Assembly (NCBI RefSeq): GCF_006345805.1
Contig: NC_043010.1
Coordinates: forward strand, 31,434,001 to 31,498,000
From: Octopus sinensis
Lineage: Eukaryota
Direction of reading: 5' to 3'
DNA length: 64,000 nucleotides
Below the pieces are notes generated by a model, which worked only from the letters and a program-made list of their open reading frames with translations, made no database searches and was not told the origin of the DNA. Numbering within the stretch: the first letter of the stretch is position 1; each line of letters starts with the position of its first letter. Made by a program: the position numbers and the translations under genes. Below, one piece after another: positions 2,025 to 59,084 of the stretch.

Positions 2025-2280
2025 ATCATCATCATCATCATCATCATCATCATCGTTTAACGTCCGTTTTCCGCGCTAGCACGGGTTGGACGGTTTCGAC
2101 CGGGGTCTGGGGAGCTCGGGACTGCCCCAGGCTCCAGTCTAGTCTGGCAGTGTTTCTACAGCTGGATGCCCTTCCTAACGCCAACCACTCCGCGAGTGTA
2201 GTGGGTGTTTTTTACGTGCCACCTGCACAGGTGCCAGAGGGGTCTGGCATCGGCCACGTTCGGATGGTGCTTTTTATGTG
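2025..2280 (-). mobile_element. RTE 3' tail / SINE-like fragment
   Basis: (atc)n + cgtttaacgtccg...gggttggacgg tail shared with RTE copies; cut abruptly at 2280. Confidence 0.8.
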
Positions 2281-2494
2281 GGGGGGGGGAATATAGGGGA
2301 GCACCAGTGGGGAGGGGTGGTTCAGAGAAATGATGACAGGTTCTAGGCAAGTAGAACGTAGGATATCAAGAGAGGGGTAATGCATGGTGAAATAGCGTAT
2401 TGAAGAGGGGGGTTCGAAGTGTAGACACCTATAATGGTGGTGGGAGAAGCGACATCCGGTATAGATGGAGCAAAAATATAGAGATATCCGGTAT

Positions 2495-2600
2495 TGGTGT
2501 TGGTGGTGGTGGTGGTGGTGTTGGTGGTGGTGGTGGTGTTGGTGGTGTTGGTGGTGTGGTTGGTGGTGGTGGTGGTGTTGGTGGTGGTGGTGGTGGTGGG
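2495..2600. repeat. (GGT)n microsatellite
   Basis: Directly visible GGT/TGT triplet run. Confidence 0.95.
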
Positions 2601-2621
2601 GGTGGGCAAGGGCGGGTGCAC

Positions 2622-2803
2622 CGGGAATATGACGGGCTGGCTTCAAAATGCTCTTAGCAAAGGAAGAGGGGGGATGGCAGACAACGTGAAAGAGGGAGAG
2701 AGAGAAGGAAATAGTGGAACCCCGCGAAAATGGGCCGCCATTGAAAAAAAAACCCCTGTATGGAGAAATAATATGCAATACAAGGCGAAGCTGAAAATAG
2801 TAA

Positions 2804-2839
<36 letters not shown>

Positions 2840-3151
2840 GCAAATTTTCGACCGAGGATCAAAGGGACAATACTACTACTAATAATAGTAATAATAATAA
2901 TAATAAACAGCTCAACCACAACATTAGATTAGAAAGACTCTCTTATCTTGGGAACATTTCGTTCTTCGGCCTGACACGGGAATATGACGGGCTGGCTTCA
3001 AAATGCTCTTAGCAAAGGAAGAGGGGGGATGGCAGACAACGTGAAGAGGGAGAGAGAGAAGGGAAATAGTGGACCCCGCGAAAATGGCCGCCATTGAAAA
3101 AAACCCCTGTATGGAGAAATAATATGCAATACAAGGCGAAGCTGAAAATAG

Positions 3152-3938: not shown

Positions 3939-4634
3939 ATGAAAAACTTTTTGTACAAGTTTTTACCAATAATGGTTTTTTCCATACCGAAACTACTTGG
4001 TAAAATTTATTAATTATTAAATTAATAATTCTTTACCATATATATATATTAAAAGTGGGGAAGGCCGGTTTATGTGTGTGTTTATGGGAAGGCTGGTTTG
4101 TTTGTGTGTTTGTGTGTGTATACACACATATGCACACACAATGATCTTTTAGTTTCTGTCAGCCAAATTCATTCACAAAGTTTTGGTTGGCCTGAGACTA
4201 TAATAGTGCTATGCAGTGAAACTTAACCTACTGAATCAAAAACCATCTGGTAGGGAAGCAAACTTCTTAACCACATAGCTATGCCTGTGCCTATATTTAT
4301 ATAGGTACATGTGTTCCTGGCCTGACCGAATTTGGAATTTGGCAGACAGAAACTGAAAGAAGTCTATTGTGTGTGTGTGTATGTGTTCAACAGACTGGAG
4401 ATTATTACCCCTCTTGGTAACAAGAAGGAGCAGTGGTGATAGGAAGGGCATCCAACCAGAGAAACTCCGCACCAGTTTACTCTCGTCTGATTAATGCAAG
4501 CATGAAAAAGTAGATGCTAAAATAATGATGATACATACACACTACTTCACTATATTTGTATTCTGTCACTATATACACACATACTGTACAGTTAACAAGC
4601 ACACCAAGTACTGTATAGATACCAGTATACTCAC

Positions 4635-9720: not shown

Positions 9721-9959
9721 CTAGGTAAAATAGAAAGACAGTATATGTGTGTGTAAATAATATCTGACTATGATGGAACAAGAGAAACATTAAGTACACC
9801 AATACTGTTTGTATCAGTTCTTTCTTAATGCAAATTACCATGATAAACTTGAATGAAATGTATGTTTTCATGCACATGTGTATATATATGCTATGAATGA
9901 GTGATGCTAGAGCTGTGAAATCTTGTAGGCATAAATTTCAATGCGTCTTAATAATAATT

Positions 9960-11107
9960 GCATTGTTTCTTTCCAGATAAACTGACATTTGACTGTTCAA
10001 AGAAGACTTCAAACGTAACTAATAGCGATTTCTCTTGAAAATGCACAAAATTTGGCATTGCAGTGTTATCTGCAGTGTTACCTGCAGAAAAAGCCTTTAG
10101 TCCCTAACAACATTTATGCTGACATGGCTGCTACACTAGAGAATGACACTCTAGCTTTATCAACAGTACAAAAGTGGGCAGCTGAATTTAGGAGGGGAAG
10201 AGGAAGTCTTGAAGATGACCCAAGGTCTGAACGTTCTGTGACTGCCACCACCAAAGAAAACATTGATTGTGTTCACCACATGGGGATGGATGACAGGTGA
10301 TTCACTATAAATCAAATAGCCAATGCTACTTGCATATCCCATGAGAAAGTTGAGAATATTCTGCATAATGGACTTGGCATGATGACGGTTTCTGCTTGGT
10401 GGGTGCCACGTCTTCTGACACCTAATTAAAAGTGCACCAGGCTGATCACATCATGAGAAAATTTGACATTGTTTCAAGCTGATCCACCTGGCTTCTTTGA
10501 ATGTTTCCTAACCCAAGATGAGTGTTGGCTTCACCACTTTGAGCCAGAGACAAAGAGGCAATCCATGCAGTGGAAACACCCCTCCTCACCTGTACCAAAG
10601 AAGGCCACTCAGTGTTGGGGAATGCAAAAGATATTGTGTTTATTGACTATCTTTGAAAGGGCCACACCGTCAATGGAAAGTACTACACCAACTTGCTGAG
10701 AGAGTTACAAAAGGCTATCAAGACCAAATGTCCAGGAAAACTGACAAAAGGAGTCTTGTTTCATCAGGACAATGCTCCAGTAAACAAGTCCTTGCTTTGA
10801 ATGGCTGCTGTGTGACTATAGCTTTGAACTGGTTGATCAACCTCATTCTCCTGATTTGGCTCCATCTGACTATCATCTGCAGCCTCAACACGGAAAAACA
10901 TTCGGCTAGGAAGTAGTATGACAGTGATGATGTCATATATGCTGTTGAGGATTTTTTTGACCAACATGATGAAAACTTCTTCACAAAGAACTATAACACT
11001 GATGGGAGAAGTGTGCAGACCACAAGGGAGATTATGTTGAAAATAAACCTCATTTGGTCACATTCCATGAGAGTATCTTGATCAGCCTATGAACTTTTCA
11101 CTCAACC
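9960..11107 (+). mobile_element. Degenerate mariner transposon
   Basis: VQKWAAEFRRGRGSLEDDPRS, (W)VPRLLT, TQDECWLHHFEPETKRQSMQW, HQDNA, SPDLAPSDYHL; right TIR atcagcctatgaacttttcactcaacc at 11081-11107; left TIR not found. Confidence 0.9.
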
Positions 11108-12025
11108 TTTTGTTTTTTTTTTCAATTCCACTGTCATAAAACTTTTTGTGCATATCTAAAATGATCCTAGATGGCTTATGGAAAACTCATGCAGAACTTT
11201 GTTGTATATATCTTGGAGAATAATTTTTGTTTTTTTAGTATGTTTTGATGTTGAAGGTAGATTGAATTCTTCCAGAAGGATGTTCTGGGATATCTTGTTT
11301 AGTCATTCCCTGTGATTTGGAATAATTTCTCTCTCTCTCTTAGTTGATTAACATGTTTTATCCAGATTTGATTATCCACTTGAATTTCATAGTTAACTTT
11401 TTCTTGTCACTTTTTAACTATTCCAGGCAACATTCCTTTTAACTTGATGTACCCATACTGGCTGTTCAGGATGGAATTTGAAGTCAGAACATAAAGATGG
11501 ATGAAATGGTAAGCATTTTGGCCAGTGCAATAAAAGTTCTGTTAGCTGGCTGCCTTAGAAAGAATTAATGTTAGGTTGTCTTCCACTCTATTTTAGCATT
11601 TTTCTTGTCAAAATTGCCACGTCATTTGTCATATCTTATTTTTCTAGACTTCATTTTGCTTCATGTAAATGCCACTGATGTATGATGTATTTTCTCCTTT
11701 GTGTTGAGCACTTGTGACTAATAATAATAAGATTGGTAGATTAGAAAATGCTTTGCAATATTTATTTTGGCTCTTTACATTCTGAGGCCAACTTTACCCT
11801 TTGTCCTTCTGGGTTGATAATTTTGATTAACCAACTTCTCTCAAAGTTGCTGGCTTTATAACCTAAATTAGAAATCATCATTATTGCTTCAGAAACTATT
11901 TTAAACTAGCAATGAACCATACAAAAGAAAATTCCACTTAAGTTAAAGAGCCTGAAATTTTTGAAAAAGGTATATTATAAAGTTTAAATAAACTGAGGCC
12001 AAGGAAGAAAAAATACTATAGTTAC

Positions 12026-13697: not shown

Positions 13698-14311
13698 CTA
13701 GTTGATGCAGAGCAGAGTTGAAATAGAAGAATACATTTTATACTGACCAATATTTCAGAACATATATGTATATACATCTGTGGGTGTATGACAACTCATG
13801 GAGAAATTGTAGGAGGTAATGAACCTCAAAAAATTAGTAGAACAGATATTATGATAAATGATAACACAATGCAATACTGGCCTGTTTCACTATGGAGAAG
13901 CATTGTTGAAATAAGAATGATGGCATTGTGTGTATGCGTAACAAGAACACTTACACACAATATGAAAAATTCTTTCCAAAAGACTTGTGACATTCTTTTC
14001 TCAAAAAAATGTTTAAATCGTTCATAACTTCTGAGAAAATCTTTAAATATTGTAACTGTATCAAGTATTTTTGGCAAAATCTTTTATCTATGTATGTGTG
14101 TGTATATATAAATATGTATAAATACATAAGCACACATATATATTTATATATATATGCATGCATTTAAAAGTATGAATGTAATCCTATACATACTCCATCT
14201 GAACAAGAAACTTGGTAATTGCAGGTGGAATGTCTTTGATAAAAGGTCTACAGGGGTAAGCAGGGGTTAAACAACATCAACAAAACTGAAGAAATGATAT
14301 TGAAAACTTAC

Positions 14312-14450
14312 ATTTGATCCAGAATCGACACAATAGTTTTGTGTTCAACTCCTTCAATCCACAGACGGCGTAGCTCATCTCTCTTACAGTGTAAAAGTGT
14401 CTTACAGGAACTGAGATCTTCTTTGATCTTTCGGATCTTGTCTCTAGATT
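14312..14450 (-). CDS. EXOC4: EXOC4 exon 5 ([45 protein letters not shown])
   Basis: Diagnostic Sec8 motif [19 protein letters not shown]; ctcAG / GTAAGT; 139 nt. Confidence 0.97.
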
Positions 14451-14462
14451 CTGAGTATAGAA

Positions 14463-14464
<2 letters not shown>

Positions 14465-14529
<65 letters not shown>

Positions 14530-14652
14530 ATATATATATATGTGTGTGTGTATATATATATATGTGTATGTGTGTGTATATATATAATTGTGTGTGTGTG
14601 TGTGTGTATATATATGTATATATATATATATATACAGAGAGAGAGAGAGAGA
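14465..14652. repeat. Compound (TA)n/(TG)n/(GA)n microsatellite next to the exon 5 acceptor
   Basis: Directly visible. Confidence 0.95.
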
Positions 14653-16180
14653 GAAAGACCTTGCTAGCGTTTGTAAGAGATCTCTTGGGATGGTAAACAC
14701 TGCAGATGCTATGCGGGGTGTTGAAGTGCAATGTTGCAGAAGTAGGCAAAGTTGGTAGTTTTTTGAGGCAACTAAAACTCACAAAATTTACTGTTGAGGC
14801 ACCATATTTAAATATATAATGAAATTGTGTTGAAGAGCAGATGGCAAAGATAAGAATATGACAATGGGTTAGCTTTCATGTCAAGTAGTTGTATTTAGCT
14901 CATAAGGAGTAGATGGTGGTTTGGATAAGTCATTTTCAAAGAAGCAAGGACATGAAGAATGTTTGAAGGATATTCTGCAGAGTAATGAGACTTCATAGAT
15001 GGATAAAAATTCAGTTGAAAATCACACGGAATATTGTTGTGATGAAGACAGCATTCAAAAAAAGTGTCAAAAGCCACAGAAATGAATTTTTCTTTTTAAA
15101 TATGATAAAAGTAAAGGCAGAAGAAAAAAAAAGAAGATTCCTTTTAATGGTGTAGTACAAATCCTGGCTGATGTGTCTGAGATTAGGTATAATAAAGAAA
15201 GTGGTGTTTGTAGAATTCAATTGACATATCAGATAAAACAGAGTCCAAGGAGATAAGTGGCACTCTGTATTAGCAAAATTTGTATTATTAGATAAAAGCA
15301 ACAGAAAGAGTATGCTGTAATTGACATAGGGAGTGAAGGATCCAACATTTCGGACAGTGTCTTTTTTTCAGGGTCAAGATGACATGAAGGATAAAAAAGA
15401 CAGAGTTTCGCATCCCCTGTGTTTGAGAGACTGGCTGCAACTGATGAGGAATGCAAGACAACATGAACTTGCATATGTAGACGGGAAATGGTGTGAAAGA
15501 TAAACTAAGTGAAAGGGAAATGAAAAGAGACAGAGAGGTGAGCTGAAAGAAGAAATTCAGATGAGAGAGGAGCGGAATGATAAAGATGGGACTGCTGAAC
15601 AAAGAGTGGGCGAAGGGAAAAAAATGTTCATTTAAACCTATTGGTGCCAATTTTGAATATCCATATACATTAGGTAAAAGACAAAGACTATAGTGATTAC
15701 TCTGTGATTCAATGAGGCTTTGGCAATCACCAGATTAATGGTACTTACTGACTCCCAAATGATGAAAGATATGCTGACTCCCTTGTATGGATGATGTGAT
15801 GTACTACCAAGAAAGAGATGAGTGAACATGGTGAGTTTAGATCTCAAGATACTGGAACTCCTGGAACTCACAGAAAGAGTGACGTCAGCCATACTGCAAA
15901 TTCATCCAACCCATGTGGAGAGAAGGTTGTTTAAAACAATGAGGTAAAAAAATTGAGTTACCCACCATTCTATACTGTCCCCACTGTTATTAGGGTCCCT
16001 ACTGAAGCAAAAAGAAAGAAGTCCACAAACTTATAACAAAGAATGAGATTTTGTATTGTTCTTTTCTCAGCAGCATTAATGGCATAAGTAAAGAGAATTA
16101 GGTTGTTCTCTGGAGACATCTAACCAATGAACATTGGGGCAAAGAGAAACAAGTAACACTATGTAACATTATAGACTCAC

Positions 16181-33159: not shown

Positions 33160-34960
33160 TGATGCTATATTCCTGGTTCGACAACTGCAGGAGAAATACC
33201 TAGCTAAAGATAAACCCCTCTACATAGCTTTTGTGGACTTGGAGAAAGCCTTTGACAGGGTCCCCCGATCCCTTATCTGGTGGTCGATGCGGAAATTGGA
33301 GATTGACGAATGGCTAATAAGGGCTGTACAGGCCCTATACAGAGAGGCTGTCAGCAAGGTTAGGATTGGCAATGAATATAGTGAAGAATTCCGGGTAGAA
33401 GTAGGTGTACACCAAGGTTCAGCCCTCAGTCCCCTTTTATTCATCATAGTCCTCCAGGCAATAACAGAGGAATTCAAAACAGGTTTCCCCTGGGAGCTCC
33501 TCTATGCTGATGACCTGGCTCTCATAGCAGAATCACTACCGGAACTAGAAAAGAAATTTTGGGTGTGGAAGCAAGGTTTAGAATCAAAGGGCCTTAGAGT
33601 AAATGTAGCAAAGACCAAAGTTATAGTAAGCAGAAAGGCGAACTCATCACACACACCCTCAGGCAGGTGGCCCTGCTCGATCTGTAGGAAAGGTGTAGGT
33701 AGAAACTCCATGAGATGTACCCAGTGTAAGCTATGGACGCATAAGAGGTGCAGCAACATCAAAGGGAAATTAGCTGATAAGATAGCTTTCATATGCGGCA
33801 GATGCACAGGGACAATAGACACCACAGATACTCAGAAAACAGATTCCATCACACTCCAAGGGGAGAAACTAGAAGTAGTTGATAGTTTCCGCTACCTAGG
33901 TGGCCAAGTTGTTAGTAGTGGAAGTGGATGCTCAGAGAGTGTCACCACTAGAATACGAATAGCCTGGGCAAAGTTTAGAAAGCTCCTCCCCTACTGGCGA
34001 CAAAGGCTCTCTCGCTCAGAGTGAAAGGTAGATTGTATGATGCATCTGTGCGAACTGCCATGCTTCATGGTAGTGAAACATGGGCTGTGACTGCAGAGGA
34101 CATGTGTAGACTTGAAAGAAATGAAGCTAACATGATCCGCTGGATGTGTAATGTCAGTGTGCACGCACGACAGAGTGTAAGCACCCTGAGAGAAATGCTG
34201 GACATAAGAAGCATCAAATGTGGTGTGCAAGAGCGACGCTTGTGATGGTATGGTCATGTACTGTGGATGGATGAGGAGAGATGTGTGAAGAAGTGCCACT
34301 CAAGGTATCAGGGGAAGAGGTAGACCCAGGAAGACATGGGATGAGGTAGTCAAGCATGACCTCAGAGCATTGGGCCTCACAGAGGCAATGACGAAGGACC
34401 GAGATCTCTGGAGATATGCTGTGACTGCAAAGACCTGGGCTGCTTCCTGCACCAGTTCCGCATAGCCCCAGCCCATTCAAAGTACCTTGGATTTCAGAAC
34501 AACCCACTGTGCTTGAGGAGACCTATTGAGTCAAGTACATGAACATTGAAATAAATATCAATGGAAATAGTAGTTATGATACCTGTGCCTGTGGCATGTA
34601 AAAAGCACTATCCAAACATGGCCAATGCCAGCACCACCTCGACAGGCTTCTGTGCCGGTGGCACATAAAAAGCACCATCCAAATGTGGCCGATGCCAGCA
34701 CCGCCTTGACTGGCTTCCATGCCAGTGGCACGTAAAAAGCACCAACCGATCGTGGATGCTGCCAGACCCCCCTGGCACCTGTGCCGGTGGCACGTAAAAA
34801 GCACCCACTACACTCACAGAGTGGCTGATGTTAAGAAGGGCATCCAGCTGTAGAAACACTGCCAGATCAGACTGGAGCCTGGTGCAGCCTCCAGTCGAAC
34901 CATCCAACCCGTGCTAGCATGGAAAACGAACGTTAAACGATGATGATGATGATGATGAAC
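33160..34960 (+). mobile_element. 5'-truncated RTE LINE with RT domain
   Basis: FVDLEKAFDRVPR, GVHQGSALSPLLF, LYADDL in ORF 33233-34024; 3' UTR and (gat)n tail. Confidence 0.95.
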
Positions 34961-36880: not shown

Positions 36881-37049
36881 ATAGGCGCAGGCATGGCTGT
36901 GTGGTAAGAAGCTTGCTTCTCAACCACATGGTTCCAGGTTCAGTTCCAGTGTATTTTGGGCAAGTGTCTTCTACTATAGCCCCAGGCCAACCAAAGCCTT
37001 GTGAGTGGATTTGGTAGACAGAAACTGTAAGAAGCCTGTCGTGTATATA

Positions 37050-39689: not shown

Positions 39690-41215
39690 GTGTGTGTATA
39701 AAAGGTGTGGAAGAGCTACTATGAAAGGCAATTAAATGTGGAGAATGAATGGGAGAACCTCCATGTGAACCCAACAGAAAGACCAACTATCCTAGTTGAC
39801 AGCAGCATGATAGATAAAGTATTCAAAGATATAAAGACAGGGAAAACCCCTGGTCCATCACAAGACACTGCTGAAATGCTTAAGCTGTCTGGAAGAGTTA
39901 GATATGGTCTAGTCATCCATATAGTTATTCAAGTTATTCAGGAAGGTGCAATCCCCAGTGACTGGTGTAGCAGCATCATAGTCAGTTGCTATAAGAGTAA
40001 GGGAGCTGCTTTATATAGAATTACAGAGGCATCAAATTGCTGGACCAAGTGATGAAAGTTGCAGAGAAAGTTATAACCCAATTAATTTAGAACAGAACGA
40101 GACTAGATGAAATGCAATTTGGCTTTGTTCAGGAGAAAGCACCACTGATGCTATTTTCATAATCAGGCAACTGCAAGGGAAGTATTTGACATTTGTTGAT
40201 CTGAAGAAAGCCTTTGACACAGTACCTGTTCTGTGATTTGGTGATTTGAGAAGCTAGGGTTTCATGGCTTGTACTGATTATGAAAGCAAAAATCAGACAG
40301 GACCTTACCCACTTCAGGTAAATGGCTCTGTTCAATATGTAGAAAGGGTGTAGGAAGAAATTCCATTTGGTATACCCAGTGCAAGCTATGAATACACAAA
40401 GGGTGCAGTGGAATAGTAGGAAGGTTAACAGAGAAAATAGTGTTTGTATGTGAAAGATGTATAGGAACTATAACAACTACAGGTACATGGGAAACTGATT
40501 TCCTCAAATGTCCTGGAGGTGCTCTGGAAGTACTTGATAATTTCTGCTACCTAGATGACTTAATAAAGCTGTGGAGGAGGATGTACTGAAAGTGTAACTA
40601 CTAGAAAAAGATTAAGGCAGAGAAAGTTTAGAGAGCTTTTACTTCTGTTAGCAACCAAAAGTCTCTCTCTCTCTCTGAATAAAAAGAAGATTGTATGATG
40701 CATGTGTACGAACTGCAATGCCACATGCTAATGAGACATGGGCCCCGAATGCACAGGATATGCAAAGACTAGAGAGGAATAAAGCTGGTATGCTCCACTG
40801 GATATGCAATGCCAGTATTCATGTGCAACTGAGTGCTAGTGCATTGAGAAAAAAGTTAGACTTAAGAGGAATTAGATGCAGTGTGCAAGAGAGAGAACAG
40901 TGCTGGTTTCGTTATGTAATGGATAAGGATGAGGACAGTTGTATAAAGAAGTGTTGCTCACTTAAAGTGATGGAAGTTGTGGAAGACAGAGACATGAGAC
41001 AAGGTACTGAAGGCCAATCTCAAAATACTGAGCCTTTGAGAGGTGACAAAGGACTGAGGTATATGGCATGTTGCTGTACTCTAGACAACCTGCCCACAAC
41101 AGAACAGAACAGAACTGATATCCCAAAACCACCTTTGCAATGCTTGCCAATGAAGGGCACTGGTGCTAGAGCTATGTAAAAAGCACGCAGTACACTCTGT
41201 AAAGTGATTGGTATT
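39690..41215 (+). mobile_element. Degenerate, internally deleted RTE LINE
   Basis: [45 protein letters not shown] motifs. Confidence 0.85.
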
Positions 41216-47524: not shown

Positions 47525-47721
47525 GAAAAGGAAATTAATTTTTGTATTACAAATTAATGACAAAATATATATAGAAAAATATCATTACTGAGTGATATGA
47601 TAAATTACTATAAGTTAGTTTCTCCAAACTATACTCGTTATTCATCTGATGAGGTAATTTTTTCATTAATTTTTTTTTTCAATTTATTTCAACAGTTAAA
47701 ATATAAGACAGCCTTAGTAAC

Positions 47722-48087
47722 CTATTGCTTTTCATCTTGCTCAATGTTAGAGTTTCTTTTGTTCCCACTGATTTTCATTTTACTTGTATAATCTGCCAGA
47801 ATGTCAGCAGTCACCTCGTCATATTTTTTCCAGATCCTTTCCACACTAGCCTCATAAGTTGCCAGGGAATCTGCAACTCTCTTGTGGTATTCTGTAACAG
47901 CTTCTGGAGTTTTTTCACTTTCCATTAACATCAAAGCAACCTTCAGTGAATTTTCATAAGCTAAACGCAGCACATCCATGTGTTGCTGGTGTTTGTCATA
48001 CATGACAGAAAGCTTCTGTTCAAACACCTGCCGTGGGCCATGGTAAGAACCACCCCAGCTACGCCATGTGGAAGATTTTTTCATCAT
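47722..48087 (-). CDS. Uncharacterised 121-aa helical protein with 11-residue periodicity, whole CDS in one exon
   Basis: Uninterrupted ATG..TAG ORF in non-repetitive sequence; aagATG context; polypyrimidine tract plus ttccAG acceptor (exon starts 48173); in-frame TGA between acceptor and ATG; AATAAA on the minus strand at 47688-47683 and 47391-47386; Y67/Y78/Y89/Y100 spacing. Confidence 0.6.
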   Translation of the reverse strand: MMKKSSTWRSWGGSYHGPRQVFEQKLSVMYDKHQQHMDVLRLAYENSLKVALMLMESEKTPEAVTEYHKRVADSLATYEASVERIWKKYDEVTADILADYTSKMKISGNKRNSNIEQDEKQ

Positions 48088-49989
48088 CTTTCTGCTTCCC
48101 GCCAGGAGTTGTTGAGACGAAAAAAGAATGAGTGTTGAAGATGAAAGTCAGCAAATATGAAGCTGGTTTAGATCTGGAAAAAGGGGAAAAAAAATTAATT
48201 ATTATTATAATAGTTTTACTGTTATATACAAAAATATGTTTACAAGAATACACGCACACATACATTGTTAGTCTCAAAAATTTTGTCAACTGAGAAAGAT
48301 AATTTACATGATAAATAAAGGTTTATTTATTTTCTGTTTTATATTTAAAATCCAAGAAAATATTATTTTCTTTTGTTGCTATCATTTAATAATTAAACCT
48401 CATTCATGTACTAAGATTATCTTCCATTTTATTCAATGTGATTTCAGTTCATAGAAAGGGTACACTCACATGTGTGTATATTTGTTGTTTGTTTTAAAAT
48501 ATACTTTAAACATTTGAAATATTAATCTAAATGACTGAAATGTGTGTTATAGAAAAAATTTTTTTTAAATGGTTTTCAAAAAAAGACTTAGAAGGGAAAC
48601 AATTATAAATGATGGTAGACCAATGCTGAAATGACCTAATTTGCAAAGTTCCAACAAAGAATGTATCAAACAATTATAGATTAATTTATATGAAAGAAAA
48701 AAAAAACAAACAAACAAACAAACAAACAACATTAACTGGAAATGCAAAGTTGAATAAGTTATTTTGTTGGCCATGCTAATTATTTAGTTTAGAAAAAACT
48801 GTGTGGATTGATAAAGGTTACAATAATATAAATATTCTACATATGGCCATGCTAAGCATGAACATTCCCAAAGACATAAAATCTTTAGTAGATCTTTCTT
48901 GGGAAAGTTCACATATACTTACAATTAGATGCACATAAAAGAGCATACAACAGTATAATGAAGAAGTTAAAACAGAGCTATTCTGTGATGATTGACTTGG
49001 CCATCCATTGATATGTCCCACATTATGACAACGTATTTCATCGTCTGCATGACTGGCCTGTACAATGTACCTCACTGACTGACACTACTTACTGACACTA
49101 CTTACTGAGTCTGTCCACTATTTATTAATAGTGGACCAGCCCATTTCTCACCTGGGGGTGTCCGCCACAACACCTTCCCCCTTTGAGATATTTTTCTTCT
49201 TTCAACACACTTTTTTTTTCATTTCTTTTTCTTCTAACCTGAATTATTTTTCTCTTCTTATTTAGATTTCTTTCTTGTTCCACACAGAATTACGTATTTT
49301 TTTTCTAAGTAAAAATCTTCAAAATGCCGCAGGTGGTACCAGTATACATTGTTTAATGGTAGCGTATGGACTTATTATTATTATTTTTTTTTTGTTCCAT
49401 ACAGAACCAGATTTTTTTTCTTCAAAATGCTACAGGTAGTACCAGTCTACATTGTTTATTAGTAGCACTACTACATATAGTAACCTGACTTAAATCCTTT
49501 ACATGGACTTATTATTTTTCACTGTGTGTGGTTCAGTTCTGTGTTAGAGTTCCAGGTTTATCAGACATTTTTTTTCTTCAGAATCTTTTTTTATATATTT
49601 TTCACTGTGTGTAGTTCAGATCCCATCTTGGGATTTTAAACATTTTTTCACTATATGAGCTCTGAATCCTCGTTGCCATTATGACGACGCATTTTGTCAT
49701 CTGCATGACTGGCCCATACAACATACCTCACTAACTGAGTCTGTCCACTATTTATTAGAGTGGACCAGCCCACTCCTCAGCTGGGGGTGTCCACCACAAC
49801 ATCCATACATACAAGTATGTCCTTCACATACACACATCTGTCCTCTGTTACACCCCTCCCCCACACTCCACCCCACCTATTTCTCTCTCTCTCTGGGATA
49901 GCTAGGTATCTCCTCTGTAGTGGGAATATTCAGCAATCACTTGATATCATGATTCGCTAGAATATTGCCTATGTGATCAACAAAATTTG

Positions 49990-52859: not shown

Positions 52860-54260
52860 AAAGTGATGGAGGGTACTGACCAGCACCAGCTGTTGCTAGA
52901 AACAAGAGTTAAAACAACTCAAAAGCCACAAAGCACTGTACTTACCTCCCTTTGTCAGTCATTAAGTACAATGCTTTGTGAACAGCAATGATAACAGCAA
53001 CTGTTAATACAACTGCTATTCAACAAAACAGAAAATACACCAAGTTCATTCACCCTGATATGGTCGCAAACTCCATTGGAATGTTCACATATAACCCAGA
53101 TGAGGGTACTACCTTTCCTGCTTGCTTTAGAAGGTATACTCTTTTACTTGTTTCAGTCATTTGACTGTGGCCATGCTGGAGCACTGCCTTTAGTCGAGCA
53201 AATCGACCCCAGGACTTATTCTTCATAATCCTAGTAGTTATTCTATCGATCTCTTTTTCCGAACCGCTAAGTTACGGGGACATAAACACACCAGCATCGG
53301 TTGTCAAGCGATGTTGGGGGGAGGGGGACAGACACACAAACATACACACACACACACGACGGGCTTCTTTCAGTTTCCGTCTACCAAATCTACTCACAAG
53401 GCTTTGGTCGGCCCGAGGCTATAGTAGAAGACACTTGCCCAAGGTGCCATGCTGTGGGACTGAACCCGGAACTATGTGGTTGGTAAGCAAGCTACTTACC
53501 ACACAGCCACTCATGCACCTATATGAAGAGATTTTTAAAGAAGAATGCTACTGCTGGCAAGATGAAAAAAAAAGTTTTGTTGAGAAAAAATATTGCAATT
53601 ACATACTGCTAAAGAGATTGGATGAAATCTGTTTTAAAGAAACTGTGGATATTCTATATAAGATTTTCAGCGAATAAAGCTCTTTATTTAATACACACTG
53701 GTAATGTTACAAAAAAAAGAGGACAAAGATTTTATTACATGCGGTGGAATTGTTAATAGGGAATAAGAGATTCAAAATTAATGAATTAACATCAGACATG
53801 TTTAATTTTCGTGCAAAGAAAGACGTGGAAATTTATAACCAAATTCTGACTAAATAAGAGCAGAATCAGAAGCTAATACTACAAGAAATATCTGATGAAT
53901 GCCAGAAGAAAGAAACTGCCCACATATACAATCAGTAATGAAAAAGCAGAAAATTAATCCACGTTTTGGATGTGGAGAACTAACAACAAAACAGATTCAA
54001 CTGTCCTTATAAAAATCAAAAATGCTTCAAGTGTGGTCATTAAAAAATCACACTGTAAAAAAAACCCCTAGAAAATGGTCCAACAGAAACAATTATGTAA
54101 ACAGTTTAGCAGTAACAAGACTAAGCGAACAAGACTAAAAGGAAATTTGTGTATGTAAAAATTAATACAAATGTAAAATTACAGTTAGATACAGGTAGTG
54201 ACATTACTTTAATTAATGAAAGCACATGGAAAAAAAATCAGGAAAACTACATTACAGAAA
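52860..54260 (+). mobile_element. Ty3/Gypsy (K02A2.6-like) gag-zinc knuckle-protease remnant, split by a SINE
   Basis: MVANSIGMFTYNPDEGTTFPA.FRRY|EEIFKEEC, CFGCGE..NCPYKNQKCFKCGH, KLQLDTGSDITLINESTWKK (aspartic protease DTG). Confidence 0.85.
53141..53520 (-). mobile_element. tRNA-derived SINE inserted in Gypsy gag
   Basis: Complete copy of the 36881 family; flanks rejoin as tttagaaggtat|gaagagatt (F-R-R-Y-E-E-I). Confidence 0.9.
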
Positions 54261-54748: not shown

Positions 54749-56033
54749 GTGGGTTGGCCAAAAAGTCCTTTTTTTTTTTTTAGTATCAACTGTCCGGTCT
54801 TCTAATCACTGTTCCGATATTCTTTTTCTTTAGAAACTGTATTCAGTATAACGACCAAGGTTACATCAGTGTGAAACAAGCCTCAAAGGAGAGAGATTGC
54901 AACTTGTTTGATTGCATTTGAGCCTAGACATGGAAGACAGGGTGGAGCACTATTGGCATCTTATGCTTTTTTACTTCAGAAAAAGAAAGAAAGCAACAGA
55001 AACTTGCTGAAAGTTATGCAATGTGTATGCAGAGAATGCTGTTTCAGAATGGGTGTGCCAGAAATGGTTTGCTTGATTTCGATCAGGGAATTTTTCAGTA
55101 AGAGATGCACCTCGCTCTGGCCAGCGAAAAGAAATTGACATCAACTAACTGAGAGCTGTAGTCAAACAAGACTGCAGTCTTATGACCAGACAAATCGCAG
55201 ATATTCTTAACATATCCAAAACAAGTGTGGAAAATGAATTGCATAAACTTGGTTATGTTTCTAAACTTGATGTTTGGGTTCCCCATAAATTGACAGAAGC
55301 AAATCTTGTCCAGAGGGTTTCCATTTGCAATTCATTGCTGAAAAGGGAAAACAACAAACCCTTTTTGAGAAGAATTGTTACTGGAGATGAAAAGTGGGTA
55401 GTTTATAATAATGTGAAACGAAGAAGATCATGGAAAAAAGCAGGGGATTCTCCAAAGCGAACACACAAAGCAGGTCTTCACCCAAAGATAGTTCTGCTAT
55501 CAATATGGTGGAATTGGAAGAGTGTTATCTTTTTTTGAACTTCTTCCCTTGAATAAAACCATCAATTCAGAGGTCTATTGTGAACAATTGGATAAATTAA
55601 AGACAGTTCTTCATCAAAAACGGCCAGAACTGGTGAATCGTAAAGGCATTGTTTTCCACCATGACAACGCAAGGCCACACACTGCTTTGATTACTCGGCA
55701 GAAGTTGCTGCAGCTTGAGTGGGAAGTTTTGCCTCACCCACCATACTATCCAGATCTGGCCCCATCAGATTTCCATCTGTTTCGGTCACTGCAAAATTCA
55801 TTGAATGGAAAAAATTTTAATTCTGATGAAGACGTGAAAACTTTCTTGGAAATTTTTTTGCTAATAAAGAACCTAAATTCTTCGAATAGGAGATTAAAGA
55901 TCTACCCAACAGGTGACGAAAGGTTATAGAAGCAAATGGTAACTATTGTATTGATTAAATACATTTTTCACAATTGTTTACTTTTCTTTTGATTTTCACC
56001 TAAAAAAACAAACGGACTTTTTGGCCAACCCAA
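54749..56033 (+). mobile_element. Full-length mariner (D,D34D), frameshifted transposase
   Basis: TIR (g/t)tgggttggccaaaaagtcc with TA TSDs at 54747-48 and 56034-35; WVPHKLT, TGDEKW, HHDNARPH, YYPDLAPSD with 34 residues between D2 and D3 (counted). Confidence 0.96.
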
Positions 56034-58215: not shown

Positions 58216-58904
58216 CACTCAAACATAGATAAATAAACATCAGACTGTGGTTGGTGAAGAGAAAATGCTTTGTCCAGTAGTGGACTAAACATGTGCAAGG
58301 ATGATGATGTAACTTGCATAAAACTATAACATAATACACACACACACACATATATAGGCGCAGGTGTGGATATGTGGTAAGAAGCTTGCTTCCCAACCAC
58401 ATGGTTCTAGGTTCAGTCCCACTGCACGGCACCGGGCTGACCAAAGTCTTGAGTGGATTTGGTACAGGGAAACTGAAAGAAGCCCATTATATATATGTGT
58501 GTGTGTGTATCTTTGTCCCCCATCCCCATCACTGTTTGACAACCAGTGTTGGTGTTTTAATGTCCCCATAACTTAGCAGTTTGGTAAAAAAAACAAACCC
58601 AATAGAATAAGTACAGGCTTAAGAAATAGGTCATGGGAGCAATTTATTTGACTAAGACCCTTCAAGGCAGTGCTCCAGCATGGCACCAGTCAAAATGACT
58701 GTCACAAGAATAAAAGACTATATATGTATATATATATATATTTTAGACATGTCTGAAACTATATATATATATAATAATAATAAGAGTAAATAATTCCTAT
58801 AATGTTTTTTAAAAAAAACCCAACAATTATTTACTGGTAGAATTCGGTATGTAAATATAACCGATTAGCGGTAGGAACTTCTGTAGAGTTCAGTATATAT
58901 ATTG

Positions 58905-58940
<36 letters not shown>

Positions 58941-59084
58941 CATTGTTAAGAAGCCTGCTTCTCAACTACATGGTTCTGGGTTCAGTGTCACTGCATGGCA
59001 CCTTGGACAAGTGTCTTCTGCTATATCAATAGACCTACCAAAGCCTTGTGAGTGGATTTGGTAAATGGAAAATGAAAGCCAATC

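What the first reader, a model, noticed from the sequence alone, without database searches (positions are those of the whole stretch)
47722..48173. Orphan 121-aa protein with strict 11-residue (hendecad) aromatic periodicity
Seen: an intact ORF in unique sequence behind a strong acceptor (tttttttcccctttttccAG, exon starts 48173), an in-frame stop before the ATG, and AATAAA 34 nt after the TAG. Residues F22-H33-Y44-M55 and then, after P61, Y67-Y78-Y89-Y100 are exactly 11 apart. Hydrophobic residues also recur at +4 (L26, M37, L48; V71, V82, M104) and +7/+8 (L75, I85/W86, I96/L97). The N-terminus is a short W/G/Y-rich stretch (WRSWGGSYHGP). Established: 11/3 amphipathic repeats occur in apolipoproteins, perilipins, alpha-synuclein, group 3 LEA proteins and right-handed coiled coils. 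Inference: a real, probably cephalopod-restricted lipid-binding or oligomeric helical protein; I recognise no family.
Basis: partly seen in the sequence, partly recalled or inferred. Interest (0 to 1): 0.72.

Follow-up and report, generated by a model that had tools for sequence, protein, structure and literature searches.

The report
Cephalopod-only small helical-hairpin protein gene
This is a real small gene, kept under selection in octopuses, argonauts, cuttlefish and a squid-like relative but found nowhere else, that encodes a two-helix hairpin built from eight 11-residue repeats with a conserved tyrosine ladder; what it does is unknown, and it is a modest curiosity rather than a surprise.

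Summary
The 121-aa ORF (47722-48087, minus strand), the in-frame TGA, the AG acceptor at 48174/48173, the AATAAA signal and all cited residue positions are present.

It is a real gene. Orthologues exist in three Octopus species, Argonauta, Sepia and at least two other decapodiform-type sequences (50-96% identity). dN/dS is 0.14-0.18. cDNAs from three decapodiform species splice a non-coding exon 1 onto the same CAG|ATCT acceptor.

An exhaustive HMMER profile search of 1.84 billion proteins, Pfam, PDB sequences and two Foldseek searches find no relative outside cephalopods and no known family.

AlphaFold2 predicts a confident antiparallel hairpin (about 18-58 and 61-107) for both octopus and Sepia. 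Hydrophobic periodicity is 3.60-3.67 residues rather than heptad. Sequence self-similarity peaks at lags 11, 22 and 33. The a-position aromatics (F22, Y44, Y67, Y78, Y89, Y100) are invariant and pair across the two arms.

The lipid-binding idea is not supported: no signal peptide, acidic or neutral helices, low HELIQUEST-type scores. The most likely reading is a soluble hairpin that self-associates or docks onto a partner. The conserved basic, Trp-rich N-terminal tail and the basic C-terminal tail are candidate binding motifs. Function is inferred only. Octopus transcription was not tested.

The parts
47722..48087 (-). Complete coding sequence (121 aa plus TAG) of the small helical protein. 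All of it lies within one exon.
   Evidence: ORF listing and sequence. It is 96.4% identical with no gaps to sister-octopod contigs L007/L008, against 78-91% in the flanks. dN/dS is 0.14. Orthologues are P0002, P0003, P0004, P0005, P0008 and P0130.
48088..48173 (-). 5' untranslated part of the coding exon (86 nt). It has an in-frame TGA at 48150-48148, no upstream ATG, and A at -3 of the start codon.
   Evidence: Sequence. It is 84% identical to L007, with an 18-nt indel that would only be tolerated in untranslated sequence. It begins with ATCT, like exon 2 of the Sepia, L006 and L018 cDNAs.
48174..48194 (-). Polypyrimidine tract and AG acceptor (ttttttttcccctttttccag) of the intron upstream of the coding exon.
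   Evidence: Sequence. It is conserved in L007/L008. The homologous TTTTTCAG|ATCT in genomic Sepia contig L004 is the junction used in cDNAs L001, L003, L005, L006 and L018. Use in octopus itself was not tested.
47683..47688 (-). AATAAA polyadenylation signal, starting at the 34th nt after the stop codon.
   Evidence: Sequence. The signal is retained in L007/L008 despite a 13-nt deletion next to it. The decapodiform cDNA L018 ends in poly(A).
48046..48087 (-). Codons 1-14: the conserved, predicted-disordered, basic and Trp-rich N-terminal tail (MMKKSSTWRSWGGS).
   Evidence: M1 M2 K3 K4 S5 W8 R9 W11 G12 are invariant in the four aligned orthologues. pLDDT is below 50 for residues 1-14. Net charge is +4 and there is no acidic residue before E23 (and the sequence).
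47914..48036 (-). Codons 18-58: helix 1, made of four 11-residue repeats starting at F22, H33, Y44 and M55.
   Evidence: AF2 helix 18-58 with pLDDT above 90. The Sepia model has the same helix at 18-57. Hydrophobic period is 3.6-3.66. Positions a, b and c are largely invariant.
47767..47907 (-). Codons 61-107: helix 2, made of four 11-residue repeats starting at Y67, Y78, Y89 and Y100 (the tyrosine ladder).
   Evidence: AF2 helix from residue 61 onward, confident to about 105. All four Tyr are invariant. Layer positions sum to 122 with those of helix 1 (22+100, 33+89, 44+78, 55+67), so the layers pair in an antiparallel hairpin that turns at residue 61 (arithmetic).
47725..47766 (-). Codons 108-121: C-terminal tail with a conserved basic patch (K103-x-K105-x-S107-G108-x-K110-R111, which starts in the end of helix 2), followed by an acidic end.
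   Evidence: K103 K105 S107 G108 K110 R111 E119 K120 are invariant. pLDDT is below 50 for residues 112-121.

Best explanation
The locus is the terminal, protein-coding exon of a small gene found in coleoid cephalopods.

Gene structure. In decapodiforms the gene has a short non-coding exon 1 spliced to an exon that holds the whole reading frame. By homology of the acceptor, the octopus gene is built the same way.

Protein. The product is about 14 kDa and has no signal peptide or membrane segment. Its core is eight 11-residue repeats, four in each of two long straight amphipathic helices. The helices fold back on each other as an antiparallel hairpin.

The ladder. The first position of each repeat sits in the middle of the hydrophobic face. 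The layers pair across the arms: F22 with Y100, H33 with Y89, Y44 with Y78, M55 with Y67. An 11-residue spacing keeps this stripe straight, so the helices need not supercoil.

Inferred mechanism. The hydrophobic face covers 4-5 of 11 positions (a, e, h, i and sometimes d). That is wider than one neighbouring helix can bury. I infer that the hairpin pairs with a second copy to form a four-helix bundle, or docks onto a partner protein. I also infer that the invariant basic, Trp-rich N-terminal tail and the basic C-terminal patch are short binding motifs, which would make the protein a small adaptor or complex subunit.

Shown: the gene is real, spliced in relatives and under purifying selection; it has 11-residue periodicity; the aromatic layers are conserved; there is no detectable relative outside cephalopods.
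Predicted: the hairpin fold.
Inferred only: self-association, the partner-binding motifs and the cellular role.
For: Real gene:
- The frame is intact in all 8 relatives.
- The CDS is 96% identical to the sister octopod, against 78% for the intron. dN/dS is 0.14 for the octopus pair and 0.18 for the decapodiform pair.
- Spliced cDNAs from three decapodiform species use the homologous acceptor, and one ends in poly(A). One run is Sepia esculenta RNA-seq (PMC9538352).
- Synteny with EXOC4/Sec8 downstream on the same strand holds in both octopus and Argonauta.
- The exon is single-copy in the window and has no transposon domain.

Fold:
- AF2 gives helices 18-58 and 61-118 with pLDDT above 90 over about 20-105 and pTM 0.62.
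- The Sepia orthologue, which has no Pro61, gives the same two-helix model with pTM 0.65.
- Both models superpose on designed helical hairpins (6o35: TM 0.64-0.78, rmsd 2.0 A over 86-90 residues).

Periodicity.

Conservation by repeat position:
- Position a is invariant in 6 of 8 repeats.
- Positions j and k are invariant in 0 of 7 repeats each.
- Position b of helix 1 is invariant in 4 of 4 repeats.

Loop: its length differs by one residue between orthologues (Y44 to Y66 or Y67). This fits a turn rather than one continuous helix.

Restricted to cephalopods. No trace was found at the IFT52 loci of chiton and oyster.
Against: - No octopus transcript was available, so use of the 48173 acceptor in octopus and the position of exon 1 are unproven. 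Exon 1 was not found in the window or in 10 kb of Argonauta sequence.
- AF2 used only four sequences and readily folds any two amphipathic helices into a hairpin.
- In Sepia and P0003 the ladder runs in one unbroken register across the loop, so an extended single helix on a surface is not excluded.
- Oligomeric state, partners and location were not tested at all.
- The single-sequence statistics are modest once corrected for post hoc choice.
Confidence: 0.55

Rival explanations
1. It is a lipid-, lipid-droplet- or membrane-binding protein of the 11-mer amphipathic-repeat type, like apolipoproteins, perilipins and alpha-synuclein. The eight repeats would lie on a lipid surface as a 3-11 helix with the hydrophobic stripe facing the lipid.
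For: - The 11-residue periodicity is real.
- In Sepia and P0003 the register is continuous over about 78 residues.
- A break in the middle of the repeat region recalls the broken-helix form of micelle-bound alpha-synuclein (from memory).
- In octopods each helix starts at a proline, as in apolipoprotein 22-mers (from memory).
- The basic, Trp-rich N-terminal tail is the only segment with a high HELIQUEST-type score (D=1.5-1.6).
Against: - No Pfam match to the apolipoprotein, perilipin, synuclein or LEA families.
- No signal peptide, so it is not a secreted apolipoprotein (sequence).
- The helices are neutral to acidic (z from -4 to +2). In octopus 0 of 73 helix windows score D>0.68; in Sepia 12 of 73 do, and none exceeds 1.34.
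- Tyr sits at the centre of the hydrophobic face, which is unusual for a lipid-inserting face.
- AF2 gives a confident folded hairpin for two orthologues.
- Loop length varies, so the in-phase register is not conserved.
Confidence: 0.13
2. It is not truly lineage-restricted. It would be the fast-evolving cephalopod orthologue of a small coiled-coil subunit already known in other animals, for example in a mitochondrial, trafficking, ciliary or cytoskeletal complex, that has diverged beyond recognition by sequence.
For: - Short helical proteins lose detectable similarity quickly. Octopus and Sepia are already only 50% identical.
- E-values in a library of 1.8 billion proteins demand about 45 bits.
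- The first 22 residues have no acidic residue and a net charge of +4, which would be compatible with a mitochondrial presequence (sequence).
- In Sepia an alternative first exon overlaps the IFT52 start codon head-to-head.
- Weak Foldseek hits include axonemal inner proteins and SH3BP5.
Against: - Nothing reaches significance in Pfam, PDB sequence profiles or Foldseek.
- The weak structural hits differ between the two models, so they are noise.
- The permissive profile search (E up to 10) returned only cephalopod sequences.
- The IFT52 adjacency is not conserved. Argonauta IFT52 is on another scaffold. Nothing similar lies next to IFT52 in chiton or oyster.
- The N-terminus is far more conserved than presequences usually are.
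Confidence: 0.2
3. It is not a functional gene. The ORF would be a chance frame, a transposon fragment, or a sequence conserved for a non-coding reason.
For: - The window is rich in transposon fragments and microsatellites.
- The genome record calls only a bare single-exon CDS.
- No octopus transcript contig was found in the collection.
Against: - The frame is intact and of conserved length across the octopod-decapodiform split.
- dN/dS is 0.14-0.18, and synonymous sites are saturated between the two clades while the protein stays 50% identical.
- Both frames on the opposite strand are broken.
- Spliced, polyadenylated cDNAs exist in three decapodiform species.
- The exon is single-copy and has no transposon domain.
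Confidence: 0.02

Closest known systems
Hendecad (11/3) helical assemblies, i.e. straight or slightly right-handed coiled coils such as the tetrabrachion stalk (named from memory)
   Same: Hydrophobic positions recur every 11 residues with 4-3-4 spacing (a, e, h/i). The measured period is 3.60-3.67, clearly not heptad. The stripe is straight along the helix.
   Different: Those are long parallel homo-oligomers, mostly in bacterial, archaeal or viral fibres. This is a 121-aa intracellular animal protein predicted to fold back on itself antiparallel, and its a positions are aromatic rather than aliphatic. There is no sequence relationship.
Eleven-residue amphipathic repeat proteins: exchangeable apolipoproteins, perilipins, alpha-synuclein and group 3 LEA proteins
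   Same: An 11-residue repeat unit, about eight copies, with a break in the middle. In octopods the helices start at prolines.
   Different: No Pfam hit to any of these families. No signal peptide. No KTKEGV-type or LEA-type consensus. The helices are neutral or acidic with low HELIQUEST-type scores. The hydrophobic face is centred on Tyr. A folded hairpin is predicted.
Antiparallel helical hairpins that pair into four-helix bundles (ROP, named from memory; the de novo designed hairpin oligomer 6o35)
   Same: Two long helices joined by a short turn. The best structural superpositions are on 6o35 (TM 0.64-0.78, rmsd 2.0 A). The hydrophobic face is wider than one helix-helix contact needs.
   Different: Foldseek E-values are 0.3-2, so this is fold resemblance only. 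Those proteins use heptad-type aliphatic cores. Here the repeat is 11 residues with an aromatic ladder, plus conserved disordered tails at both ends. The oligomeric state is unknown.
Uncharacterised database entries for the same gene: UniProt A0A0L8FN35 (Octopus bimaculoides) and GAB1604299.1 (Argonauta hians)
   Same: They are orthologues of the window's protein, more than 90% and 75% identical.
   Different: They are annotated only as uncharacterised or hypothetical. No family, structure, repeat or function is recorded, and no paper in the searched library mentions the accessions.

Membership tests
Exchangeable apolipoproteins (ApoA/C/E type) | Sequence match to the apolipoprotein Pfam family | tested here: not met
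   hmmscan against Pfam-A at E up to 10 lists no apolipoprotein family.
Exchangeable apolipoproteins (ApoA/C/E type) | Secreted, with an N-terminal signal peptide | tested here: not met
   The N-terminus MMKKSSTWRSWGGSYHGPRQ has no hydrophobic core. This was judged by inspecting the sequence; no signal-peptide predictor was run.
Exchangeable apolipoproteins (ApoA/C/E type) | Tandem 11/22-residue amphipathic helical repeats | tested here: met
   Self-similarity is highest at lags 11 and 22, and the hydrophobic period is 3.6-3.67.
Perilipin / alpha-synuclein / LEA group 3 (lipid- or surface-binding 11-mers) | Family sequence signature (Pfam perilipin, synuclein or LEA_4; the KTKEGV-type or LEA consensus) | tested here: not met
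   No such Pfam hit. The stacked repeats show the consensus Y-E-x-x-[LVM]-x-x-[ILM]-L-x-x, which is unlike those motifs.
Perilipin / alpha-synuclein / LEA group 3 (lipid- or surface-binding 11-mers) | Helix physico-chemistry typical of lipid-binding amphipathic helices (HELIQUEST discriminant above 0.68, or above 1.34) | tested here: not met
   Octopus helix windows: 0 of 73 exceed 0.68. Sepia: 12 of 73 exceed 0.68 and none exceeds 1.34. Net charge is -4 to +2. This is a rule-of-thumb score, not an assay.
Perilipin / alpha-synuclein / LEA group 3 (lipid- or surface-binding 11-mers) | Binding to lipid droplets or membranes | not testable with these tools
   It needs liposome flotation or localisation experiments.
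Hendecad (11/3) coiled coil, a structural class | Hydrophobic periodicity of 11/3 = 3.67 rather than 7/2 = 3.5 | tested here: met
   Peak angle is 98-100 degrees in each helix of four species. Power at 98.2 degrees is 1.4-2.4 times that at 102.9 degrees. A helix of 40-46 residues cannot separate a period of 3.67 from 3.60.
Hendecad (11/3) coiled coil, a structural class | Assembly of two or more helices around the hendecad stripe | tested here: inconclusive
   AF2 monomer models pair the two arms, but this is a prediction from four sequences. No multimer prediction was possible.
Antiparallel hairpin that dimerises into a four-helix bundle (ROP-like) | Helix-turn-helix hairpin topology | tested here: met
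   AF2 gives this for two orthologues. Superposition on hairpin 6o35 gives TM 0.64-0.78 and rmsd 2.0 A. This is a predicted structure, not a solved one.
Antiparallel hairpin that dimerises into a four-helix bundle (ROP-like) | Homodimerisation | not testable with these tools
   Only monomer prediction was available, and concatenated or paired inputs are not accepted.
Transposable-element ORF | A transposon protein domain, or several copies in the genome | tested here: not met
   No transposon domain in Pfam. The exon matches only itself within the 64-kb window. Orthologues sit in conserved synteny with EXOC4. Copy number across the whole genome was not tested.
Lineage-restricted (coleoid cephalopod) gene family | Orthologues in several cephalopod lineages and none detectable elsewhere | tested here: met
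   Found in Octopus (3 species), Argonauta, Sepia and two or more other decapodiform-type sequences. Nothing else appears in 1.84 billion representatives at E up to 0.001 except a spurious tandem repeat, nor at E up to 10 in the word-indexed search. Nautilus was not specifically examined. The species of P0003, P0008 and P0130 are not known.

The most novel reading that the evidence does not exclude
This is a gene family truly born in the coleoid cephalopod lineage. It would have been built by internal multiplication of an 11-residue (33-bp) unit and would form a previously undescribed kind of straight helical bundle held together by a ladder of tyrosine layers. It would have a lineage-specific cellular role, carried out through its invariant basic, Trp-rich N-terminal motif.
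Probability: 0.15. Interest if true: 0.55.

Novelty: new variant of a known kind. Interest (0 to 1): 0.35.

Why it matters
Cephalopod biology is often linked to lineage-specific genes, yet few small ones have been shown to be real, conserved and structured. This one is a clean example: short, single-copy, under purifying selection across the octopod-decapodiform split, and predicted with confidence to fold.

Its invariant tyrosine ladder on an 11-residue repeat is a simple, testable design for a straight, non-supercoiled helical hairpin. That may interest people who study or design coiled coils.

It does not open a long-standing question. Without expression or interaction data its role is unknown, so it is a worthwhile but modest target.

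Tried and rejected
Homology and fold searches:
- Pfam at E up to 10 gave only sub-threshold noise (Aca2_YdiL 0.012, DUF2130, TPR_5).
- PDB by sequence gave SAM synthetase at E 1.7.
- PDB by profile gave the DNA polymerase beta 8-kDa domain at E 0.14. That alignment needs a 2-residue gap inside what is predicted here as one continuous helix, so I rejected it as chance.
- The profile hit P0009 (E 5.5e-6, 7 stretches) is a perfect tandem repeat of KPVMTDYKELL. It matches the period, not the family.
- Foldseek gave weak hits to axonemal doublet inner proteins with model 1 and to SH3BP5 with model 2 (E 0.5-2). They did not replicate between models, so I rejected them.

IFT52 lead:
- Sepia contig L001 shows an alternative first exon overlapping the IFT52 start codon in antisense, which suggested ciliary co-regulation.
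- IFT52 is not in the window.
- It is on a different scaffold in Argonauta.
- The overlap is not seen in the IFT52 transcripts of a second decapodiform.
- Chiton and oyster IFT52 loci have other neighbours and no profile hit.
- I dropped this lead as a general feature of the gene.

Search for the octopus first exon:
- blastn-short and an nhmmer profile of the conserved decapodiform exon 1 found nothing in the window or in Argonauta.
- A 91-bp block that is 91% identical between Argonauta and window 53357-53447 turned out to be a SINE.

Other:
- Origin from a 33-bp minisatellite: DNA self-match at lags 33 and 66 is only slightly raised, and not at third codon positions, so there is no support.
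- Literature: no paper mentions the accessions, and the generic searches were uninformative.
Full report
**1. The observation**

- The minus strand carries an ATG-initiated ORF at 48087-47722. It encodes 121 aa: MMKKSSTWRSWGGSYHGPRQVFEQKLSVMYDKHQQHMDVLRLAYENSLKVALMLMESEKTPEAVTEYHKRVADSLATYEASVERIWKKYDEVTADILADYTSKMKISGNKRNSNIEQDEKQ.
- An in-frame TGA lies at 48150-48148.
- A polypyrimidine tract ends in AG at 48174, so the exon would start at 48173.
- AATAAA lies at 47688-47683.
- Tyr is at 15, 30, 44, 67, 78, 89 and 100, and Phe at 22. The cited hydrophobic positions at +4 and +7/+8 are correct.
- The exon is single-copy within the window. The opposite strand has only broken frames.

**2. Is the periodicity more than chance?**

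In this one sequence, four Tyr at a constant spacing has P=0.0066 for Tyr at any spacing from 2 to 20. However, some residue type at some spacing does this in 30% of shuffles. The Tyr run alone is therefore not compelling. Three independent measures support it.
- BLOSUM62 self-similarity of the 88-residue core is highest at lags 11, 22 and 33 out of 32 lags in all four species. For lag 11, z is 2.9-3.6 and p is 0.0004-0.004. Allowing any lag, p is 0.03-0.15. Stacking the sequence by elevens gives eight repeats with the consensus Y-E-x-x-[LVM]-x-x-[ILM]-L-x-x.
- Hydrophobic power peaks at 98-100 degrees (period 3.60-3.67) in each helix. It is 1.4-2.4 times the value at the heptad angle.
- F22, Y44, Y67, Y78, Y89 and Y100 are invariant in orthologues that share only 50% identity.

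Two caveats apply. 'Strict' holds for helix 2; in helix 1 two of the four ladder positions are H/Q and M/L. A helix of 40-46 residues cannot separate a period of 3.67 from 3.60.

**3. It is a real gene**

*Relatives*:
- the window's own entry, on a chromosome of assembly GCA_951406725.2. From memory I take this to be an Octopus vulgaris assembly; this was not checked.
- O. bimaculoides A0A0L8FN35, which differs at 2 residues.
- a third octopod, from genomic contigs L007/L008.
- Argonauta hians GAB1604299.1, 75% identical.
- sequences of 118-119 aa that are about 50% identical: P0003, P0004, P0008 and P0130.

One run carrying P0004 (SRR20545809) is a Sepia esculenta juvenile transcriptome (PMC9538352).

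*Conservation.* L007/L008 align colinearly with window 48288-47368.

| Region | Identity to L007 | Gaps |
|---|---|---|
| Coding sequence | 96.4% | none |
| 5'UTR part of the exon | 84% | 18-nt indel |
| Intron | 78% | present |
| 3' flank | 91% | present |

The '85-aa' call for those contigs is only an internal-Met start call; the full frame is intact.

*Selection.* dN/dS is 0.14 between the octopods (dS 0.12) and 0.18 between two decapodiforms (dS 0.49). Between the two clades the synonymous sites are saturated while the protein stays about 50% identical.

**4. Gene structure**

- Sepia contig L004 is unspliced and reads ...TTTTTCAG|ATCTTCAC...
- cDNA contigs L003 and L005 (Sepia), L006 (a second species) and L018 (a third, ending in poly(A)) join a homologous non-coding exon 1 (...GTTCGAGGCTTTCAGTTTG...GAAG) to the same ATCT.
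- Octopus has ...ttccag|ATCTAAACC at a similar distance from the ATG: 86 nt, against 73 nt in Sepia.

Limits:
- I had no octopus transcript.
- The decapodiform exon 1 profile finds nothing in the 16 kb upstream within the window or in 10 kb of Argonauta.
- A 91-bp block conserved at 91% between Argonauta and window 53357-53447 is a SINE, not an exon.

**5. Genomic context**

- In Argonauta the next gene downstream on the same strand is Sec8/EXOC4, 5 kb away.
- In the window, EXOC4 exons lie colinearly at about 29.0, 20.5, 17.3 and 14.4 kb on the minus strand.
- The position upstream of EXOC4 is thus conserved among octopods.

In Sepia, contig L001 shows an alternative first exon that overlaps the IFT52 start codon in antisense, a head-to-head arrangement. 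This is not general:
- IFT52 is not in the window.
- It lies on another scaffold in Argonauta.
- A second decapodiform's IFT52 transcripts do not show the overlap.

**6. No known family, and no relative outside cephalopods**

- Pfam gives nothing above noise.
- PDB sequence and profile searches give nothing below E=0.14.
- An exhaustive HMMER profile search of 1.84 billion representatives finds only the cephalopod sequences plus P0009. P0009 is a perfect tandem repeat of an 11-residue unit and matches the period, not the family.
- A word-indexed profile search at E up to 10 adds only one more cephalopod-type member.
- IFT52 loci of a chiton and an oyster have other neighbours and no profile hit on six-frame translations.
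- Nautilus was not specifically examined.

**7. Structure**

- AlphaFold2 on the four-sequence alignment gives helices 18-58 and 61-118. pLDDT is above 90 from about 20 to 105, both tails are disordered, and pTM is 0.62.
- With the Sepia protein as target the result is the same: helices 18-57 and 63-116, pTM 0.65. Sepia lacks Pro61.
- Both models superpose best on designed helical hairpins (6o35: TM 0.64-0.78, rmsd 2.0 A). No Foldseek E-value is below 0.3.
- The other weak hits (axonemal inner proteins; SH3BP5) differ between the two models, so they are noise.

The ladder positions fit an antiparallel hairpin exactly: 22+100 = 33+89 = 44+78 = 55+67 = 122. The layers F22/Y100, H33/Y89, Y44/Y78 and M55/Y67 therefore face each other around a turn at residue 61.

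The loop differs by one residue between orthologues. The spacing from Y44 to the next ladder Tyr is 23 residues in octopods and P0130, and 22 in Sepia and P0003. This argues for a turn rather than one continuous in-phase helix.

On an 11/3 wheel the hydrophobic positions h, a, e and i are adjacent, with the aromatic a position in the centre. Conservation by repeat position:

| Position | Invariant repeats |
|---|---|
| a | 6 of 8 |
| b, helix 1 only (E23, Q34, E45, E56) | 4 of 4 |
| j | 0 of 7 |
| k | 0 of 7 |

**8. How it probably works**

The sequence shows no signal peptide, no membrane segment and no cysteine in the octopus protein. The protein is probably a soluble intracellular hairpin.

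Its hydrophobic face covers 4-5 of 11 positions, more than one helix-helix contact can bury. I infer that it pairs with a second hairpin to form a four-helix bundle, or docks on a partner.

Two tails are far more conserved than disordered regions usually are:
- N-terminal: MMKKSxSWRxWGGxxHGPRQVFEQK.
- C-terminal: KxK(x)SGxKR.

I infer that these are short binding motifs. This part is inference only.

**9. The lipid-binding idea**

- The helices are neutral to acidic (net charge -4 to +2).
- No 18-residue helix window reaches the HELIQUEST-type score of 1.34. In octopus, 0 of 73 windows reach 0.68.
- No apolipoprotein, perilipin, synuclein or LEA signature is present.

It is not excluded. The register is continuous across the loop in Sepia and P0003, and the basic, Trp-rich tail could touch acidic membranes. 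I give it about 0.13.

**10. Verdict**

The gene is real, helical, has no recognised family and is restricted to cephalopods. It is not an orphan within cephalopods, and there is no evidence for lipid binding.

It is a new variant of a known kind: a lineage-restricted small helical-hairpin protein built on hendecad repeats. The gene is already deposited as an uncharacterised protein. Interest is modest, at 0.35.

Noticed in passing
window 14308-14700 (-), and about 29008-28928, 20569-20478 and 17351-17250 (-): These are exons of the exocyst subunit Sec8/EXOC4 (Sec8_N, E 3.6e-6). They are colinear with the Argonauta gene. EXOC4 starts about 19 kb downstream of the small gene on the same strand, as in Argonauta, where the gap is 5 kb.
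   Followed up: partly
L001 (Sepia esculenta-type contig) 1500-1716: An alternative first exon of the small gene overlaps the start codon of IFT52 on the opposite strand. The unstranded assembly therefore fused the two mRNAs head-to-head. The arrangement is absent from the window, from Argonauta (IFT52 is on another scaffold) and from a second decapodiform's IFT52 contigs.
   Followed up: yes
L002 (Sepia contig) 1-1440, junction at about 1414: The CDS and 3'UTR are identical to the other Sepia contigs. The upstream 1.4 kb is unrelated AT-rich non-coding sequence, and it diverges 27 nt before the ATG with no AG at the break. It may be a 5'-truncated processed retrocopy or an assembly chimera.
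   Followed up: no
window 53357-53447 (-), 36956-37041 (+), 58433-58485, 58998-59078, 4335-4362: These are copies of a SINE-like element. One copy is 91% identical over 91 bp to a copy 280 nt upstream of the Argonauta orthologue, which is higher than the 73% identity of the coding sequence. The octopus copy continues into a typical SINE body.
   Followed up: partly
window 33233-34024 (+); also 25.9-26.3 kb (+) and 40691-41179 (+): A retroelement fragment with reverse transcriptase (RVT_1, E 3e-18) followed by a PHD/C1-like zinc finger. Two further ORFs share its C-terminal motif ([22 protein letters not shown]) but have no Pfam hit.
   Followed up: partly
window 55522-55929 (+): A fragment of a mariner-type transposase (Transposase_1, E 9e-9).
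   Followed up: partly
window 20.9-22.4 kb and 24.9-28.5 kb; 2212-3012: Several kilobases of TA/CA-type microsatellite produce long spurious Y/I/C/H/T-rich ORFs on both strands. A His-codon repeat lies near 2.2-3.0 kb.
   Followed up: no
L016 (chiton Liolophura sinensis) 10001-11338; L017 (oyster): IFT52 is a single uninterrupted exon in the chiton assembly, with ML-domain genes on both sides. In the oyster, IFT52 lies head-to-head with a PX-domain protein kinase (SGK-like). From memory, this recalls the SGK2-IFT52 neighbourhood in human.
   Followed up: no
P0009 (549 aa, from the representative library): A protein whose C-terminal half is a perfect tandem array of the 11-residue unit KPVMTDYKELL, i.e. 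a translated 33-bp DNA repeat. It was the only non-cephalopod profile hit, and it matched purely through the 11-residue Tyr period.
   Followed up: yes
L018 121-501 (ERR1711942): The gene caller read through a stop codon and so called 126 aa. The real product is 119 aa, starting MMKKSSSW and ending SEEK*. The contig is a polyadenylated cDNA. From the accession range I take it to come from a marine metatranscriptome; this was not verified.
   Followed up: partly
L010 (Argonauta) about 9760-9880: A CCAAT box, an inverted CCAAT (ATTGG) and TATA-like motifs lie 120-240 nt upstream of the Argonauta ATG, just after the SINE. The Argonauta gene may therefore have a proximal promoter. No counterpart was seen upstream of the octopus exon.
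   Followed up: no
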